This document shows, piece after piece, positions 43,875 through 50,708 of a DNA stretch of 64,000 nucleotides. Position numbers and translations under genes: made by a program. Numbering within the stretch: position 1 is the stretch's first letter; every line of letters begins with the position of its first letter. The notes below the pieces were generated by a model. The model ran no database searches, was not told the DNA's origin, and was given only the letters and a program-made list of their open reading frames with translations. Origin of the DNA: Entomortierella parvispora E1425 (taxonomy: Eukaryota > Fungi > Mortierellomycota); assembly GCA_020891255.1 (NCBI GenBank), contig BQFW01000006.1, forward strand, positions 1,860,001-1,924,000, written 5' to 3'.

Positions 43875-44425
43875 AACGAGAGAAGACAGAGAGAGAAACA
43901 AACAGATGGCCTCCCAGAAATGAAGTGCCTCCTTCCTCTCTTTGCCTCGTTTCGTCTTTTGTTCTTTGGCCTCTCTTTTCTGCTCCTCCAGGACCTTGGT
44001 CTCTTCTCGTCGTTCGTTCTTCCCTTCCCTTCCTTCCTCCTCTTTCTTCTCCTGTGGTTCGCTCCCTTCGCTAAATTTCGTTCACATATTTCTTTCCCCG
44101 TCTTTCCTTTTGCTCGTCTTGTTTCTTCCCTCCACTCGCATTCCCTCCATCTCCATCCCATTCCCTTAATAATCATCATTCCAATTCTCCTTTTCCTCGG
44201 CCTTCCTCCTCCCCACCCGAGGATCCCTTGCTCTCAGTTGCTCCTCCCCCTACTCCCTTCGAGATCGCCATTCTCGATTTCAAGACTTACCCTGATCGCC
44301 CCTTCCTTCTGTTTCTCGTCACTTGTTTCTGAAACTTGCTTCTTTCTCTCTCCCAACAATCCCCTCCCTTTGACCGTGCGAGCAATAACACGCCCAGGAT
44401 TCTGTCCCAACATTCATTACAATCC

Positions 44426-47400
44426 ATGGCACAGTCCCAGCAACGAAAGCCAGGAAGCTGGGACAATGATCGTCTGATAAAGTAAGGAATCAATCTCAGG
44501 AAAACAGGAGCAAGAGGACTAATGGGCCATGGCGGTGGTGTTTGGTGGTGGTGCTACAATGGATTGGGAATTCTCATCCTTCAGTCCCAGGACCACGGAA
44601 AAGCGCTGTTTGGACACAACAACGCAACAACAGCGGCAGGAGTGTGGGCCTCTGTCCTTGTCCCATGGAAACCGCGAAACCCCCTTTTGTTGTCGTTCGC
44701 TAATCACAAAAGAAAGGACAGCCAGACAGGAGCTCTGAGCTTGAGGAGGGGGGAATGGTCTGCTGAGATGTCAGATGGAATCGACACTATCGGATATGAA
44801 TGACTGAACGTTCGCAGGACATCAGTAGCCTCGAATATTGCAGTGCTGTCCCTAGCTGAAAGATGCTCTGCGATGGTACCATTCTCCCTCTCATTGCTCC
44901 ATCGGCTCTCAGGTTTTTCTGAGACGGAATCTGTTCAGCGAAAAGGGCACAAACTCAAAAGTCAGGAAGAGAATAGCGGATGTTCAACGGGAGGCAAAGG
45001 CTGGATTGCCAGCAATCATCAGACTGCGTGCATATGTGGCGACCTCTCAGGAGTCGAATCTCGACTGGATTCGCAGGAGATGGACTGGAACGTGGGACGA
45101 GATCTTGCAGTTGCACCGGAGAGACCCCTTCTGCTTCCCCCCTCTTTCTCTAGTTTTGTTTTTGCAAATGCAAATGGAGACTAGGAGAGGGAGAAATGAC
45201 TGCATGCTGCGTGTCGAACCCAAGCAGGAGAGGGAGGAGAGCAAGAGGGGGACCAGGAAGACTATTCATTTTTCATCCATATGTCTTTGCCACGGAGTGT
45301 GTCTCTTTTGTGGTGTTTCCCGCCCTCCTTCTCACCCCTGTCGCGGGATGGTTTTTTATTTTTCGGTATCTCCACTCATTGTCTTTGGTCAGCCTCCCAA
45401 GCATTGTGTTGGCAGCTCTCTGCTGGATCGCCCCTGTCGGTTTGCAGCGAGCCACCACCAGCTTCTACGTTTGAGGTTCTATACATGTGTGTCTGTGTGT
45501 GTTTCGAGCTTGGAGAGCAGCAGCAGAGGCACAGGGACACAAGACGGGGGTTGTGCCAGGTCATGAGCAGTGAGCAAAAACAAAAAAAGAGGCAAAGAGA
45601 TCGACAGGGGAGGGAGCGCACACCTGGCTCTTGGGCAGCCCTCAGACCCGCCACGGTCACCTTCCCAGAACCATTGAGAGAGAGCATCCACTAACAATCC
45701 TTCCTTTTCTCTTCTTTTCCCGTGTGGTAGTCTGTACATCTACGATTATTGTGTCAAGCGCAACTTCCAGGCATCGGCAACGGCATTCGCAACCGAGGCA
45801 CAGGTCGGGCCAGATACCAAGGTTGAATTTGATACGCCAGAGGGCTTCCTGTACGAATGGTTCGTGGTCTTTTGGGATTGCTGGAACGCAGGCCACCAGG
45901 TTGGGAACTTTGGCAAGGATGCTGCAGCTTTCATGGAGGTACGAACGACTTTTTCTTCTCACAGTTCATTGTCGGGTCGATCTAATAATTTCAATCTAAA
46001 AAAGCTTCTTTCGACTCCGCACATCTCGATATGTTTCTCGTTTTCATAGCTCAACCCACTGGCTCGACAGACAATGAGACTTCCTCAGGGTCAGACTGCC
46101 TTTCAGGCCAGGAATGGCCAGCAGATGCAAATGCAGCAGCTTCAGCTTCAGCAACAGCAGCAGTTGCAGCAGCAACAACAGCAGCTCCAGCAACAGATGA
46201 TGCAGCAGCATCCTCAACAGCTCCTACAAAAGCAGCAGCAGCAGGCCTTGGAGCAGCAACAGCAACAGCAGGCACATCAACAGCAGGCACAGCAAGCCCA
46301 GCAGCAGCAAGCCCAACAGCATCAGGTACAGCAGCAACAAGTGCAACAGCAGCAGACACAACAGCAGGCGCAACAGCACCAAGTACAGCAGCAGCAGCAA
46401 GCACAGCAAGTGCAACAGCAGCAAGTACAGCAACAACAAGTACAGCAGCAACAAGTACAGCAGCAACAAGTGCAGCAGCAGCAAGCGCAACAACAGCAAG
46501 TGCAACAACAGCAAGCCCAGTTGCAAGCCCAGCAGCAGCAGCAGCAACAACAACAGCAATTGCAACAACAACAGCAGCAACAGCAACAACAGCAACAACA
46601 ACAACAACAACAACAACAACAGCAAGCGCTGCAACACCATACGTCCATGCAGAATCAACAGCATCCGGGAATGACACCAAACGCCACACAATCACCGAGC
46701 ACCATCCACATGCAGTCGCCTCATCCACAACAGCAGCAGTTACAGGCATCGCAACAGGCCGGACATATGGCAATGCATTCCTCACCTCAGTTCTCAACAG
46801 CTCAGACAGTTACTCCCCTCACGGGTCCTGTTGATTCTGTAAGTGTTTATGTTTTGAACTTGAGCTTGAGTTTAAGGGAAAGCATAGAGTGGTCAATTGA
46901 CTGAACCCCATTCTCTCAAATTAGCCTCAGCTTGCAAATCTTGCACAAAAGGCGCCCCTTGGTGTCCAACAGCTCCGTGGCCAGTAAGTGGTTGTCCTCG
47001 CATGCGAGCCATGGCATCAATCGCGAATTTGACCTAACGCAACCTGCGGCTATTTGTCTATACTTTTGCTTTAGTGGAATGATGAGCCCCGTGCAGAAAA
47101 ATGTATTCATCAAGCAGCATAAGCAAGTTCAGCAAGCTCAGCAACAGCAACAACAACAACTTATCCAGCAGCAGCAACAGCAGCAGCTCGCTCAGCAACA
47201 GCAACAGGCTCAACAGCAAGCACATCAGCAGCAAGCACAGCAAATGCATCAGCAGCAACAACAGCAATTGCACCAACAGCAACAATTGCAGCAATTGCAG
47301 CAATTGCAGCAGCAGCAACAGGTACAGCAGACGACTCCACAGCAAGGACCAATGCAGGCGCTGGATCCACAGCATCAACAGTTACTTCTGCAGCAACAGC

Positions 47401-50400
47401 AACAGCAACAGCAACAACAGCAGCAGCAGCTACAACAACAACAACAACAGCAGCAGCAGCTACAGCAGCAACAGCAGTTGTTGCAGTCGCAGCAGCATCA
47501 AAAAATGTTACAGCAGCATCAACAGCAGCGGCAACACCAGCAGATGCAGATGGCGGCCGCCAGAGCAGCGGGTATCATGCCGGCAGCAGCAGAGCACTCC
47601 TCGCCAGTACCAACGACTGGGGATCCTCAGATGGATTCGCCACAGGATCGTAAACGTATTCGAAATAATTCCAGCGGAGCGTTTTCTCCGGTTATTGGGC
47701 AACCTAATCAAGCGACGCCGCTTCAGCAACACCCTGCCCTCATGGCAGCGAATGCTGGTTCTCCGAATACCTCAAATTCGCCAATAGTGACTAATGCGGT
47801 GCAGCCTGCCGTGAGCGTACCCGAGACGCCGACTAAAGGAAACCGCAGGAAAAAGTCGGTGAAGAAAGAGCCATCATTAGGCCCTGGAGTAGATGCGGCA
47901 TCCGTGCCGATAACTGGGGCTCAGTTCGTCGTCCCTGGAAATGCCAATGTGCCAGCAGTAAACGGCTGGACACAAGGCAGTCCAAGCGTGACACACATGC
48001 AGCAGCAAGGTTCTCCAGCGCCACAACAGGGTGTGCAGATGCAAGGAGCTGTCCCACCGCAAACTCAACAGCAATTGCAACAACATATGCAACAACAGCA
48101 CCAGCAGCAACAGCTTCAACAGCTTCAACAGCAACAGCAGCATGCTCAAATCCAAATTCAACAGCAGCATCAGTTACAACAACAGCAGCAAGCCGAGCAG
48201 CAGATGCAGATGCAGGCACACTTCCAACGACAACAGCAGCAGCAACAGCAGATGGCCGCGGCCGGTATGCATGTCCGTCCTGGTATGATGCACCCTCCTG
48301 TTCGGCCAGGCGTCAGTCCAACGATCGGGGTGGCGACTCCAGGAGTTATCCAGTCCCCAACAGCGAACCCCCAGTTGTTACCTGGGCTACTGACACAGCC
48401 GCAGCTTCAAGTCCGACAGATCCAGCAAGCTCAACAGCAGCAGGCTCAACAAGCTCAGCAACAGCAGCAACGTATGCAGCATCAGCTGCAAATGCACCAG
48501 CAGCAAATGATCCAACAGAATCAGCAGCAGCACCAGCAGCAACATCTTCAGCAGCAACAGCAACAGCAACAGCATCTTCAGCAACAACAGCAATTGCAGC
48601 AGTCTGGACAACCTGGACAACCTGGAGATGTGCAACATCAGCAACACTTCTTAACACCGAATCAACAGACACAACAGCATCTCCATCAGGGGACGTTGGG
48701 TCCTCAGACACCACAGGATTCGTCGCTTCTCAAGAGCACGCAGAGCCCGGTGCCGCAAAACACAGCCCCAAATGGAGTTCATATTCCTGTTGACCCAACT
48801 ACAGGAGTTCCCCAGAGTATGGACCCCAACATGCAATCGGCTCCCTCTCCGTCTAACCAGGCTCTTCGAGAGAGAATCCAGTCAATGCAGTCGCCCAATG
48901 TGAGCAACAGCACACTTTCAACGCCTTTGAGCATGGGGTCTCCTTCCAGTCGCGCAAGGATACTTCAGCAGCAGCAGCAACAACAGCAGCAACAGTTCCA
49001 TGCTCAGCAGCAGGAGGCACAAAAGAAGCAGCAGCAGGCTATGATTTGGGCGCGTCCAGGTCAAATTAACTTGGACAGCTCGAAGTTGCCTTTGCAAAGG
49101 CAGCAATCGATGATGAATCAACAACATATGGCTGGAAATGAAGTGAGTAAACGTGATTCATCGTGCGTCTTTGTCTGGATTTACCTTCATTAACAATTCC
49201 GTTGGTGCAAATGTTCATATTAGGAATACAACGGCTCCCCTAACGCGGGATCTCAGACGGAAGCTCCTGCTGCTATTATCTCTCCCTTGTCAGTTGGAAT
49301 TGATAATGGCGCAGTGGGTACGGGTGGTGTTGATGAGCTTGGAAGGATGCAGAACCTTCTAACGGACAATAGCGAGTTCGAGAATATCGAGAATGATGGA
49401 TTACAGATGGACATGGGTGTGGACGCGTATGGAAATATAAACCTGCTGAATCTCGGTCGAAGCGAAGGTTTGTGATAGTACCGAAGCGATGTATGCCGAT
49501 GGACAGACTCGTTTTGTTTTCTGTGCGGTTCTGTTTGCTTTTTTGCTGGTTTGTTAATCTCAGTATACCTTTTCTAGATTCCCAGTTGCAGCTCTTTGGT
49601 GAATTGAGCGGACATATACAAAAAATTCACACGTGTGCGTTTTCATCTGATGGGCGGTGGCTGGCAAGTGCTGGCGTAGACAAGAAAGTGATGATATGGT
49701 CTGTCGTAGACAAGGAGCTGAAGTATACGATTGAAGGTGTTGAAGGTCACACAGCGTACATTACCAATGCAAGATTCACACAGGATGATCGACTCATTCT
49801 TGGCACGACTGCTCATGATTCTACTCGCATCTGGGACTTGGGACCGTTGGCGCAAGGCACCTCTTCAGCGGTTCATTCTCTTCAAGTCCTCAAGGGGCCA
49901 AACATGGATTTTAAGGCAGTTGATTTCTGTCCTGGGATTGGAAGCACCAAATGTGTTACTTGCGATACTGGTGGCGAATTGCGACTGTGGGACTTTAAGA
50001 CTGGTCAATGCGAACGAACAATCAAAATGGTAAGACGCCAAAGTGACGATGACCCCAGTCGATGGTTTCTTGAATTCAGATGAGATTTCTAATATTATGA
50101 TTTGCAACCGTCATGTTTCATAGTCAATCAAGACAGTGTACTTGCCTCATCCTCCTGTGAGATATCACCCGCTGAATCCCAACATCATTGCGGTAGCCGT
50201 CGGCACTTCTCTCTATGCAGTTCAGCTCAACGACCCCTCCTCCCCTCCTCGACCGTTAAACACAACTCACAACAGCAACATTACTACTCTGGATTGGTCC
50301 GAGAATGGCAACTTTTTGGTGACTGCCTCGGAAGATCAAGTCTGCGTCTGGGACTCTTCGAACAATGCAAACCGATGGCGCCCATTGAAGTCTCAACAAA

Positions 50401-50708
50401 CCCAAAAGGTTAACAGCTGTGCCTTTATCAAAGCGTCTCCTTCTTCTACCACGATGGCTTCGAAATCAAATGCAACGACGACACGACTAGTCTATGGCGA
50501 ATACGAAAAGATATGGATCTGGACATTTAATGGAGGTGGCTATATTGGTAGCACTCCAGTGGCGGATTCTCGGGCGCACCCAGGTGCGGCAGTGTTGGCA
50601 CTGGCTAGTTCACTTACCAAATTGGATGGCGAAACATCTACAGTGATGTTGGCAAGCGCAAGTGCTGGCAAAGACGGGAACCTCAAGCTGTGGAAACTCC
50701 CTGTTTAA
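44426..50708 (+). CDS. LEUNIG-like protein: N-terminal LUFS/LisH domain, very long Gln-rich region, C-terminal WD40 repeats
   Basis: Exons 44426-44481, 45731-45938, 46050-46838, 46925-46983, 47075-49142, 49224-49467, 49578-50029, 50124-50708 join in frame. N-terminus WDNDRLINLYIYDYCVKRNFQASATAF..DTPEGFLYEWFVVFWD. WD repeats include GHIQKIHTCAFSSDGRWLASAGVDKKVMIWS and HNSNITTLDWSENGNFLVTASEDQVCVWD. Confidence 0.88.
46130..46630 (+). repeat. Coding CAG/CAA polyglutamine tract containing a 15-bp (QQQQV)n sub-repeat
   Basis: Read directly from the sequence. Further polyQ blocks lie at 47130-47540, 48070-48250 and 48420-48600. Confidence 0.9.

What the first reader, a model, noticed from the sequence alone, without database searches (positions are those of the whole stretch)
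44426..50708. Complete plant-LEUNIG architecture (LUFS + polyQ + WD40) in a fungus
Seen: once a 56-nt exon at 44426 is spliced across a 1249-bp intron, the N-terminus reads WDNDRLINLYIYDYCVKR...PEGFLYEWFVVFWD. This closely parallels the LUFS domain of Arabidopsis LEUNIG (WEADKMLDVYIHDY...PGGFLFEWWSVFWD). It is followed by about 1000 Gln-rich residues and a WD40 propeller. Established: LUG/LUH are usually described as plant Gro/Tup1-like corepressors, while LUFS proteins of Dikarya (Flo8, Mss11, Som1, Adn2/3) and animals (SSDP) lack WD40 repeats. Inference: either the three-part architecture is ancestral and was truncated in Dikarya and animals, or it fused independently. It predicts a LEUNIG-SEUSS-like corepressor complex with an LDB1/Mfg1 homolog in early-diverging fungi. 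The ORF track misses the LUFS domain entirely.
Basis: partly seen in the sequence, partly recalled or inferred. Interest (0 to 1): 0.7.

Follow-up and report, generated by a model that had tools for sequence, protein, structure and literature searches.

The report
LEUNIG-type co-regulator gene in Mortierella
This soil fungus has one eight-exon gene with the same three-part layout as the plant transcription co-repressor LEUNIG; the layout is shared by many early-branching fungi but missing from yeasts and mushrooms, so the "plant" regulator is much older than published and yeast Flo8 looks like a shortened version.

Summary
An eight-exon gene (44426-50708, +; 4461 coding nt, 1486 codons) encodes a LUFS/LisH N-terminus, 1052 residues at 38% Gln, and a C-terminal WD40 propeller.

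No RNA data could be obtained. The 56-nt first exon and 1249-bp intron rest on comparison instead. The ATG, the exon, the GTAAG donor, a CTAAC-like branch point and the TAG acceptor are all conserved in Mortierella sp. AM989, while the intron itself does not align.

The layout is not peculiar to this fungus. Single proteins with LUFS plus WD40 sit unnamed in public databases for Mucoromycota, Chytridiomycota, Monoblepharidomycetes and Neocallimastigomycota; for Basidiobolus only separate LUFS and WD40 records were seen. All Dikarya relatives seen (Flo8 type) lack WD40.

The fungal propeller aligns end to end only with plant LEUNIG/LUH. In a tree it is sister to the green-plant clade (96/92), apart from this genome's own Tup1, Prp19 and three unnamed WD40 genes. 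Independent fusion is therefore unlikely.

This is the genome's only LUFS gene, and two LDB/SEUSS-type genes are present. I found no paper describing the architecture in fungi; a 2026 study dates LUG to streptophytes. The function, a LUFS-LDB-tethered co-regulator, is inferred.

The parts
44426..44481 (+). Exon 1 (56 nt): start codon and MAQSQQRKPGSWDNDRLI, the first part of the LUFS/LisH domain; ends in phase 2 (AA|)
   Evidence: Sequence read. The motif is unique in the window. It is 14/18 identical to a conserved upstream exon in Mortierella sp. AM989, with ATG and GTAAG donor conserved. N-termini of Pilobolus, Basidiobolus and plant homologues begin MAQS..W.
44482..45730 (+). Intron 1, 1249 bp, GTAAGG...TAG, with a CACTAACAATCC branch-point-like box about 30 nt before the acceptor
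   Evidence: Single copy in the genome. No Rfam family. The interior does not align to AM989, whereas donor, branch box and acceptor do.
45731..45938 (+). Exon 2: rest of the LUFS domain (LYIYDYCVKRNF...PEGFLYEWFVVFWDCWNA...)
   Evidence: Pfam LisH 1.1e-5. SSBP2/SSDP LUFS structures, E about 2e-6. 312 LUFS relatives in 1.84e9 representatives. 90 bits to a 20-sequence LUFS profile.
46050..46838 (+). Exon 3: 263 aa, 56% Gln
46925..46983 (+). Exon 4 (59 nt), a short linker exon; the least certain part of the model
   Evidence: Placed by GT-AG sites and frame only. No homology support.
47075..49142 (+). Exon 5: 689 aa, 36% Gln, with the basic stretch RRKKSVKK (possible nuclear localisation signal)
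49224..49467 (+). Exon 6: 81 aa linker with the acidic motif TDNSEFENIENDG ahead of the propeller
   Evidence: 46% identity to AM989. Motif compared with plants and fungi by eye.
49578..50029 (+). Exon 7: first half of the WD40 propeller
   Evidence: Pfam WD40 6.5e-15. 48% identity to Calcarisporiella and 31% to a Gossypium LEUNIG over 135 aa in one alignment. 62.5% to AM989. Placed in the fungal clade, 100/100.
50124..50708 (+). Exon 8: second half of the WD40 propeller, ending ...NLKLWKLPV and the stop codon
   Evidence: Pfam WD40 5e-11. Collinear with the plant LUG C-terminus up to its final KLWK. 47% to AM989. Tree.

Best explanation
The locus is one eight-exon gene for a LEUNIG-type transcriptional co-regulator. 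It is the fungal member of the LUFS / Gln-rich / WD40 family and the only LUFS-family gene of this Mortierellaceae genome.

Shown here:
- The architecture itself.
- The conservation of exon 1 and its splice signals.
- The specific kinship of both end domains with plant LUG/LUH.
- The architecture's presence across early-diverging fungi and its absence from the Dikarya relatives seen.

Inferred from what is established for LUG-SEUSS, Flo8-Mfg1/SomA-PtaB and SSDP-LDB1:
- The LUFS domain dimerises through its LisH helices.
- It docks on an LDB/SEUSS-type adaptor; two such genes are in this genome.
- The adaptor is recruited by DNA-binding factors.
- The long Gln-rich stretch acts as a flexible, possibly condensate-forming or activating linker.
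- The propeller recruits chromatin or Mediator partners.

The protein would then act as a repressor or activator depending on context.

Evolutionary reading: the three-part architecture arose once and was already present in the ancestor of Fungi. The WD40-less Flo8/Som1 proteins of Dikarya are most simply derived from it by loss of the propeller.
For: Gene model.

Junction of exons 1 and 2:
- The motif is unique in the 64-kb window.
- Exon 1 is 14/18 identical in Mortierella sp. AM989 (tblastn E 3e-12).
- Exon 1, the start of exon 2 and a short 32-bp piece upstream of exon 1 are the only conserved DNA there; the intron interior does not align.
- The ATG, the AAA|GTAAG donor, the branch box, the TAG acceptor and the Asn split codon are all conserved.

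One gene rather than two: LUFS and WD40 lie in a single annotated protein in Mortierella sp. AM989, Calcarisporiella, Pilobolus, Bifiguratus, Gonapodya, Synchytrium, Irineochytrium, Quaeritorhiza, Anaeromyces and Piromyces.

WD40 kinship:
- A profile of eight fungal propellers aligns in one domain over about 300-370 of 393 positions with named plant LEUNIG/LUH (best domain 83-138 bits).
- Bacterial and generic WD40 proteins reach at most 69 bits in short pieces.
- This genome's own Tup1 (2 copies), Prp19, Utp13, TAF5, LIS1 and others reach at most 64 bits, fragmented.
- Tree: fungi 100/100, green plants 97/91 with the chlorophyte Cymbomonas basal, the two together 96/92 against same-genome outgroups. 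Zoosporic fungi form a 100/99 clade, as expected for vertical descent.

Other support:
- The embedding search of the Calcarisporiella homologue returns only plant LEUNIG/LUH clusters (0.91-0.92).
- LUFS matches solved SSBP2/SSDP LUFS domains, and the alignment shows shared W-x-x-D-K-M-L and GFLxEWWxVFWD blocks.
- There is a single LUFS locus in 38.9 Mb.
- Two LIM_bind loci are confirmed exon by exon.
- SomA-PtaB and Flo8-Mfg1 pairing is described in PMC4631450; LUG-SEU pairing through LUFS/LDB in PMC13395540.
Against: - There is no transcript evidence.
- Exon 4 has no homology support.
- Outgroups in the WD40 tree are few, and some are partial or on long branches (the Tup1 piece, Prp19). No TBL1/HOS15/Sif2 or Groucho/TLE sequence could be included.
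- In whole-sequence bit scores TBL1XR1 (117), Utp13 (138) and WDR5 (103) overlap the plant LUG range (86-142). The distinction rests on end-to-end collinearity and on the tree.
- The LUFS tree (84 columns) is unresolved and does not show where Dikarya Flo8 branches.
- No binding, repression or activation was tested.
- Absence from animals, other protists and all Dikarya was not surveyed exhaustively: only the best 150 of 312 LUFS hits were seen.
Confidence: 0.8

Rival explanations
1. The architecture is homologous but did not descend vertically from a common ancestor of plants and fungi. An early transfer between the green lineage and an ancestor of Fungi, in either direction, would explain why only these two groups were seen to have it.
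For: Among the hits whose origin I could identify, WD40-bearing LUFS proteins came only from Fungi and Viridiplantae. Vertical descent would need losses in animals, Dikarya and possibly many protist lineages.
Against: Fungal and plant clades are reciprocally monophyletic, with a long stem on each side. Each mirrors its own species tree (chlorophyte basal in plants; zoosporic fungi together), so any transfer would have to predate both crown groups. Other eukaryotic groups were not surveyed, so the two-kingdom pattern may be a sampling effect.
Confidence: 0.15
2. Convergent fusion: a fungal Flo8-type LUFS protein acquired an unrelated WD40 propeller independently of plants.
For: WD40 domains are abundant and easily recombined. 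Whole-sequence scores of the fungal propeller profile against WDR5, TBL1XR1 and Utp13 overlap those against plant LUG.
Against: Only plant LUG/LUH align end to end in a single domain, up to the shared C-terminal ...KLWK end. The tree gives 96/92 support for fungi plus plants against same-genome WD40 genes. A short acidic motif before the propeller looks shared (by eye). The embedding neighbours are all LEUNIG/LUH.
Confidence: 0.05
3. Same gene, different main role. As the only LUFS gene of the genome, it works chiefly like Dikarya Flo8/Som1: a cAMP-PKA-responsive activator of adhesion, morphogenesis or sporulation genes together with an Mfg1/PtaB-type partner, rather than as a LEUNIG-like repressor.
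For: There is a single LUFS locus. Dikarya Flo8 LUFS domains are as similar to it as plant ones. Flo8-Mfg1 and SomA-PtaB act as activating complexes (PMC4631450). A long Gln-rich region is typical of activators.
Against: It retains a propeller collinear with that of a known co-repressor family, conserved across early fungi, which argues that the propeller's function is kept. Plant LUH itself both represses and activates (a study titled so is in the reference list of PMC9564828), so the two roles need not exclude each other.
Confidence: 0.3
4. Mis-joined model: the LUFS/Gln-rich part and the WD40 part are two adjacent genes.
For: No RNA evidence was obtained. Basidiobolus entries carry the two parts in separate records (P0004 LUFS only, P0157 WD40 only).
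Against: All exons are in frame, with short canonical introns and no stop. There is no start codon context or promoter-sized gap between exon 5 and exons 6-8 (81-110-bp introns). Ten other fungi have both parts in one annotated protein. The Basidiobolus LUFS record is 256 aa on an 11.9-kb contig, and whether it is complete was not checked.
Confidence: 0.04

Closest known systems
Plant LEUNIG / LEUNIG_HOMOLOG (LUG/LUH) Gro/Tup1-like co-regulators
   Same: The order of parts is the same: N-terminal LUFS (LisH plus the GFLxEWWxVFWD block), a Gln-rich middle, and a C-terminal WD40 propeller running to the very C-terminus (...KLWK). The propeller is collinear at 29-31% identity and is sister to the plant clade. 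The start of the protein (MAQS..W..DK/R..L) is also shared.
   Different: The protein is much longer: about 1050 aa of 38% Gln, against roughly 700-950 aa in total for the plant proteins seen. The WD40 blades carry lineage-specific insertions. It is fungal. No functional data exist, and published work dates the family only to streptophytes (PMC13395540).
Dikarya Flo8 / Som1 / SomA (and Mss11) LUFS transcription regulators
   Same: The LUFS domain is similar (about 37-52% identity over the matched part of exon 2). Here it is the only LUFS gene of the genome, as somA is said to be in Aspergillus fumigatus (PMC4631450). An LDB-type partner (Mfg1/PtaB) is expected.
   Different: All Dikarya relatives seen have no WD40 propeller: Rhizoctonia, Mixia, Tulasnella 'flo8', Ceratobasidium, Naganishia, Eremothecium, Saitoella, Pneumocystis.
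Animal SSDP / SSBP2-4 (LUFS partners of LDB1, ChiLS complex)
   Same: The LUFS domain is detectable by sequence against the solved SSBP2 and fly SSDP LUFS structures (E about 2e-6). The implied mode of docking on an LDB dimerisation region is the same.
   Different: SSDP has no WD40 (established knowledge). Its similarity is limited to about 53 residues.
Tup1 / Groucho / TLE co-repressors
   Same: The general logic is shared: an N-terminal oligomerisation domain, a low-complexity middle and a C-terminal WD40 propeller.
   Different: There is no Tup_N domain. The genome has two separate Tup1 genes. The one Tup1 propeller piece included, which is partial and on a long branch, scores low against the fungal LUG-type profile and falls outside in the tree.
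TBL1 / TBL1XR1 / HOS15 / Sif2 (LisH + F-box-like + WD40)
   Same: LisH at the N-terminus, WD40 at the C-terminus, and a role in HDAC co-repressor complexes.
   Different: The N-terminal domain here is of LUFS type. TBL1XR1 matches the fungal propeller profile significantly only over about 100 of 393 positions. No TBL1-type sequence could be placed in the tree.

Membership tests
LEUNIG/LUH (LUFS-type Gro/Tup1-like co-regulators) | N-terminal LUFS domain (LisH plus the conserved downstream block) | tested here: met
   Pfam LisH. SSBP2/SSDP LUFS structures. Alignment with plant LUG/LUH LUFS at 52-58% identity over about 53 aa.
LEUNIG/LUH (LUFS-type Gro/Tup1-like co-regulators) | Central glutamine-rich region | tested here: met
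   Exons 3-6 are 1052 aa with 403 Gln, 38%.
LEUNIG/LUH (LUFS-type Gro/Tup1-like co-regulators) | C-terminal WD40 propeller homologous to that of LUG/LUH | tested here: met
   End-to-end single-domain alignment of the fungal profile with named plant LEUNIG/LUH. Pairwise collinearity. Tree 96/92 for fungi plus plants, with limited outgroups.
LEUNIG/LUH (LUFS-type Gro/Tup1-like co-regulators) | All three parts in one polypeptide | tested here: inconclusive
   In-frame GT-AG model, single-protein homologues in ten other fungi and conserved exon 1 splice signals all point that way. No transcript data were available.
LEUNIG/LUH (LUFS-type Gro/Tup1-like co-regulators) | LUFS-mediated binding to a SEUSS/LDB adaptor | not testable with these tools
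   Only the presence of two LIM_bind genes in the genome was shown.
LEUNIG/LUH (LUFS-type Gro/Tup1-like co-regulators) | HDAC- or Mediator-dependent transcriptional repression | not testable with these tools
   Needs tethering or knockout experiments.
Flo8/Som1 (Dikarya LUFS regulators) | LUFS domain followed by low-complexity sequence only, with no WD40 | tested here: not met
   The LUFS domain is present, but a WD40 propeller is also present. The Dikarya relatives lack it.
Flo8/Som1 (Dikarya LUFS regulators) | Orthology of the LUFS gene | tested here: inconclusive
   It is the sole LUFS locus in the genome, so it is the only possible counterpart. The LUFS tree is unresolved.
Tup1/Groucho | Tup_N (or Q/GP) N-terminal tetramerisation domain | tested here: not met
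   Pfam on exon 2 gives LisH only. Tup_N maps to two other loci in the genome.
TBL1/HOS15/Sif2 | LisH followed by an F-box-like domain and a TBL1-type propeller | tested here: not met
   The N-terminus is of LUFS type. TBL1XR1 matches only about 100 of 393 profile positions significantly. The F-box-like part was not specifically sought.

The most novel reading that the evidence does not exclude
LUG-SEUSS (plants), Flo8-Mfg1/SomA-PtaB (Dikarya) and SSDP-LDB1 (animals) are three descendants of one ancient co-regulator module. Its LUFS subunit originally carried a C-terminal WD40 propeller. Early-diverging fungi and green plants keep the ancestral form, while Dikarya and animals lost the propeller independently. 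Flo8/Som1 and SSDP would then be truncated LEUNIGs, and the origin of LEUNIG would move from about 800 My (streptophytes) to before the plant-fungus split.
Probability: 0.45. Interest if true: 0.7.

Novelty: new member of a known kind. Interest (0 to 1): 0.55.

Why it matters
LEUNIG/LUH are treated in the literature as plant co-repressors. A 2026 study places their origin, and that of LUG-SEUSS pairing, in the streptophyte lineage (PMC13395540).

A complete, conserved LUFS / Gln-rich / WD40 gene across early-diverging fungi, with a propeller sister to the plant one, would have three consequences:
- It would push this co-regulator back to, or before, the ancestor of Fungi.
- It would link three separately studied systems: LUG-SEUSS, Flo8-Mfg1/SomA-PtaB and SSDP-LDB1.
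- It would recast the well-studied virulence and morphogenesis regulators Flo8/Som1 as propeller-less derivatives.

It also gives a concrete, testable question in tractable Mucoromycota: what does the propeller add to a Flo8-type regulator?

On the practical side, gene models in Mortierellaceae miss the first exon. The GenBank model of Mortierella sp. AM989 does, and the ORF track here misses the LUFS domain altogether.

Tried and rejected
- The joined spliced protein was not built, searched or folded. Every search used single exons by reference or database homologues.
- The search for homologous proteins on the WD40 region of the Calcarisporiella homologue was swamped by multi-repeat bacterial WD40 proteins. 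It added only Basidiobolus and Pilobolus.
- The same tool on that protein's LUFS region found only itself, with too few shared words.
- A reciprocal search of the genome with a plant LUG propeller was uninformative. Giant NACHT-type WD40 genes and exon splitting dominate the scores.
- Whole-sequence bit scores against PDB WD40 proteins do not separate families. I used single-domain coverage and a tree instead.
- The LUFS-only tree is unresolved.
- NCBIfam gave nothing for the outgroup WD40 genes.
- The strict exon 1 motif was absent from the AM989 contig because of an Asp-to-Val change. A peptide and DNA search then found the exon.
- Rfam found nothing in the long intron, and a genome-wide DNA search showed it is not a repeat.
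Full report
**What is in the sequence**

On the + strand between 44426 and 50708 I read an eight-exon gene:

| Exon | Coordinates |
|---|---|
| E1 | 44426-44481 |
| E2 | 45731-45938 |
| E3 | 46050-46838 |
| E4 | 46925-46983 |
| E5 | 47075-49142 |
| E6 | 49224-49467 |
| E7 | 49578-50029 |
| E8 | 50124-50708 (with stop) |

- All seven introns are GT-AG with GTAAG/GTGAG/GTACG/GTTTG donors.
- Six introns are 81-111 bp and the first is 1249 bp.
- The exons sum to 4461 nt, a multiple of three, giving 1486 codons plus the stop.
- E1 reads MAQSQQRKPGSWDNDRLI. Its last two bases (AA) join the T at 45731 to give Asn, and E2 continues LYIYDYCVKRNF...PEGFLYEWFVVFWDCWNA.
- Everything below used single exons by reference, or full-length homologues from the databases.

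**Domains**

- Pfam finds LisH in E2 (E 1.1e-5). It covers profile positions 6-27 of 27, so the start of the domain lies upstream of exon 2. Pfam also finds WD40 repeats in E7 and E8.
- E2 matches the solved LUFS domains of SSBP2 and fly SSDP (6iwv, 8hib, 6tyd, 6s9r; E about 2e-6).
- Exons 3-6 encode 1052 residues with 403 Gln (38%; E3 alone is 56% Gln). They include one basic stretch, RRKKSVKK.

**Is exon 1 real?**

Three lines of comparison stand in for it.

1. The strict motif W[DE]x[DE][KR][LMI][LIMV], which precedes YIYDY in LUFS proteins, occurs once in all six frames of the 64-kb window, at 44459.
2. Homologues begin the same way:
   - Pilobolus: MAQSQRRNTWDG...
   - Basidiobolus: MAQPPSKNLWDGDKMLNIYIYDYC
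   - plants: MAQSNWEADKMLDVYIYDY
3. In the contig of Mortierella sp. AM989 that carries the orthologue (L029):
   - The peptide MAQSQQRRPASWVNDRMI (14/18 identical, tblastn E 3e-12) lies about 1.1 kb upstream of the LUFS exon.
   - At the DNA level, exon 1 (81.5% over 92 bp), the start of exon 2 and a 32-bp piece upstream of exon 1 are the only conserved islands there. The intron interior does not align.
   - The ATG, the donor AAA|GTAAG, a branch-point-like box (CACTAACAATCC here, CATTAACAATCC there) about 30 nt before the acceptor, the TAG acceptor and the Asn split codon are all conserved.

The intron is single-copy in the genome and holds no Rfam family. I take the junction as very likely real. 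Exon 4 (59 nt) is the weakest part of the model, since it rests on splice sites and frame only.

**One gene or two?**

A search of E2 against 1.84 billion representative proteins gave 312 LUFS relatives. I checked the best 150 for the window's WD40 exons and looked up names.

LUFS and WD40 lie in one annotated protein in:

| Organism | Length (aa) |
|---|---|
| Calcarisporiella thermophila | 1211 |
| Bifiguratus adelaidae | 1632 |
| Pilobolus umbonatus | 1129 |
| Gonapodya prolifera | 1787 |
| Synchytrium endobioticum | 1418 |
| Irineochytrium annulatum | 1453 |
| Quaeritorhiza haematococci | 2331 |
| Anaeromyces robustus | 1328 |
| Piromyces finnis | 1324 |
| Mortierella sp. AM989 | 1081 (partial) |

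- The AM989 protein matches E2 at 64%, E6 at 46%, E7 at 62.5% and E8 at 47% identity.
- Its GenBank model lacks the true first exon and reads part of the CAG-rich region in an Ala/Thr frame.
- These proteins carry only generic names: 'hypothetical protein', 'LisH domain-containing protein', 'WD40 repeat-like protein'.
- Every Dikarya relative seen has no WD40. These are Rhizoctonia, Mixia, two Tulasnella 'Transcriptional activator flo8', Ceratobasidium, Naganishia, Eremothecium, Saitoella 'flo8' and Pneumocystis.

**Is the propeller the LEUNIG propeller?**

Simple scores do not settle this. E7 scores higher against WDR5 than against plant LUG when repeats are summed. I therefore built a profile of eight fungal propellers (A1, 393 positions).

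| Target | Result against the A1 profile |
|---|---|
| Named plant LEUNIG/LUH (Zingiber, Sesamum, Oryza, Coffea, Cucumis, Canavalia, a liverwort, Mesotaenium) | one domain over about 300-370 positions, best-domain 83-138 bits |
| Bacterial and generic WD40 proteins | only the first two blades, at most 69 bits per domain |
| PDB: TBL1XR1, WDR5, Utp13 | significant stretches cover only about 100-170 positions |
| This genome's own single-propeller genes, including two Tup1 genes, Prp19, Utp13, a Utp12-type gene, TAF5 and LIS1 | at most 64 bits, in fragments |

- Pairwise, E7 and E8 align collinearly with a Gossypium LEUNIG at 29-31% identity, down to the shared C-terminal ...KLWK.
- In a maximum-likelihood tree the fungal propellers form one clade (100/100). 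E7 and E8, entered separately, sit with Mortierella sp. AM989 (100/97).
- The zoosporic fungi group together (100/99).
- The green-plant proteins form the sister clade (97/91), with the chlorophyte Cymbomonas at its base.
- The two clades are joined (96/92) against five WD40 genes of this genome.
- Caveats: the outgroups are few, some are partial or long-branched, and no TBL1- or TLE-type sequence was available.
- An embedding search with the Calcarisporiella homologue returned only plant LEUNIG/LUH clusters (0.91-0.92).
- By eye, a short acidic motif ahead of the propeller also looks shared (not tested statistically):
  - plants: DDNVESFLSHDDGD
  - AM989: EDNVTFDLFNDGDGD
  - window: TDNSEFENIENDG

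**Genome context**

- Other agents' notes call this genome Mortierella-like or Entomortierella parvispora. I only verified that its closest orthologue is from a Mortierella.
- A 20-sequence LUFS profile finds a single LUFS locus in the 38.9-Mb genome, this one.
- Two LDB/SEUSS/Mfg1-type genes are present on the same contig. In each, consecutive exons match consecutive parts of LIM_bind, and a Gln-rich N-terminal frame precedes them.
- Two Tup1 genes also exist, so this gene is additional to Tup1 rather than a replacement for it.

**Interpretation**

Shown:
- A LUFS / Gln-rich / WD40 gene.
- Its conservation across early-diverging fungi.
- The specific kinship of both end domains with plant LUG/LUH.
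- The absence of the propeller from the Dikarya relatives seen.

Inferred: the protein works as a LUFS-dimer scaffold that docks on an LDB-type adaptor and uses the propeller to recruit chromatin or Mediator partners, repressing or activating by context. This follows LUG-SEUSS (PMC13395540), Flo8-Mfg1/SomA-PtaB (PMC4631450) and SSDP-LDB1 (the structures hit).

- Independent fusion is disfavoured.
- A single origin is favoured, with later loss of the propeller in Dikarya. The loss itself is not resolved by the LUFS tree.
- An ancient transfer between the green and fungal stems cannot be excluded, because other eukaryotic groups were not surveyed.

**Novelty**

- The sequences are already public but unnamed.
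- In the searchable library I found no paper that reports LEUNIG-type proteins in fungi.
- The most recent evolutionary study restricts itself to streptophytes. [quoted passage not shown]
- The library lacks most subscription journals, so this is absence of evidence only.
- I rate the finding a new member of a known kind in an unexpected kingdom. It is of moderate interest, chiefly for the link it draws between LEUNIG, Flo8/Som1 and SSDP.

Noticed in passing
L029:4567-4620 and L029:5633-10003 (Mortierella sp. AM989, JAAAUM010001095.1): The GenBank model BGX27_000544 starts at a spurious MRYIESKNPL. It misses the conserved first exon about 1.1 kb upstream and reads part of the CAG-rich region in an Ala/Thr-rich alternative frame.
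   Followed up: partly
window 49360-49420 (exon 6) and the homologues shown: A short acidic motif 30-60 aa before the first WD40 blade looks shared by plant LUG/LUH (DDNVESFLSHDDGD), Mortierella sp. AM989 (EDNVTFDLFNDGDGD), other zygomycetes (GDFSDIF.GGDD) and the window (TDNSEFENIENDG). It was seen by eye only.
   Followed up: no
window 44321-44352: A 32-bp stretch about 75 bp upstream of the start codon is 81% identical to the corresponding place in Mortierella sp. AM989. It may be a conserved 5'UTR or promoter element.
   Followed up: no
G000 C6:469558-472830 (L005) and C6:402466-406122 (L007): Two paralogous LDB/SEUSS/PtaB-type genes (LIM_bind split over consecutive exons, with a Gln-rich N-terminal frame) lie about 67 kb apart on the same contig as the LEUNIG-type gene, about 1.4 Mb away from it.
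   Followed up: partly
G000 C14:955956-959500 and C4:2527000-2530888: There are two Tup1 paralogues, with Tup_N split over two small exons in each.
   Followed up: partly
G000, many loci (e.g. C10:630 kb, C7:894 kb, C8:3020 kb, C13:2057 kb): The genome holds dozens of very long open frames (about 1300-1900 aa) packed with canonical WD40 repeats, probably NACHT/NOD-like receptors. They dominate any WD40 search of this genome.
   Followed up: no
window 46031-46834 (+), 46051-46797 (-), 46224-46691 (-), 46322-46648 (-): Long Ala/Thr-, Ala/Val-, Leu- and Cys-rich ORFs overlap the CAG/CAA-rich exon 3 in other frames and on the opposite strand. They are by-products of the repeat composition, not genes.
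   Followed up: yes
P0016 (Bifiguratus adelaidae OZJ03101.1, 1632 aa): UniRef names this LUFS+WD40 protein 'Alpha-galactosidase'. The propeller ends near residue 1143, so the model probably runs on into a neighbouring gene.
   Followed up: no
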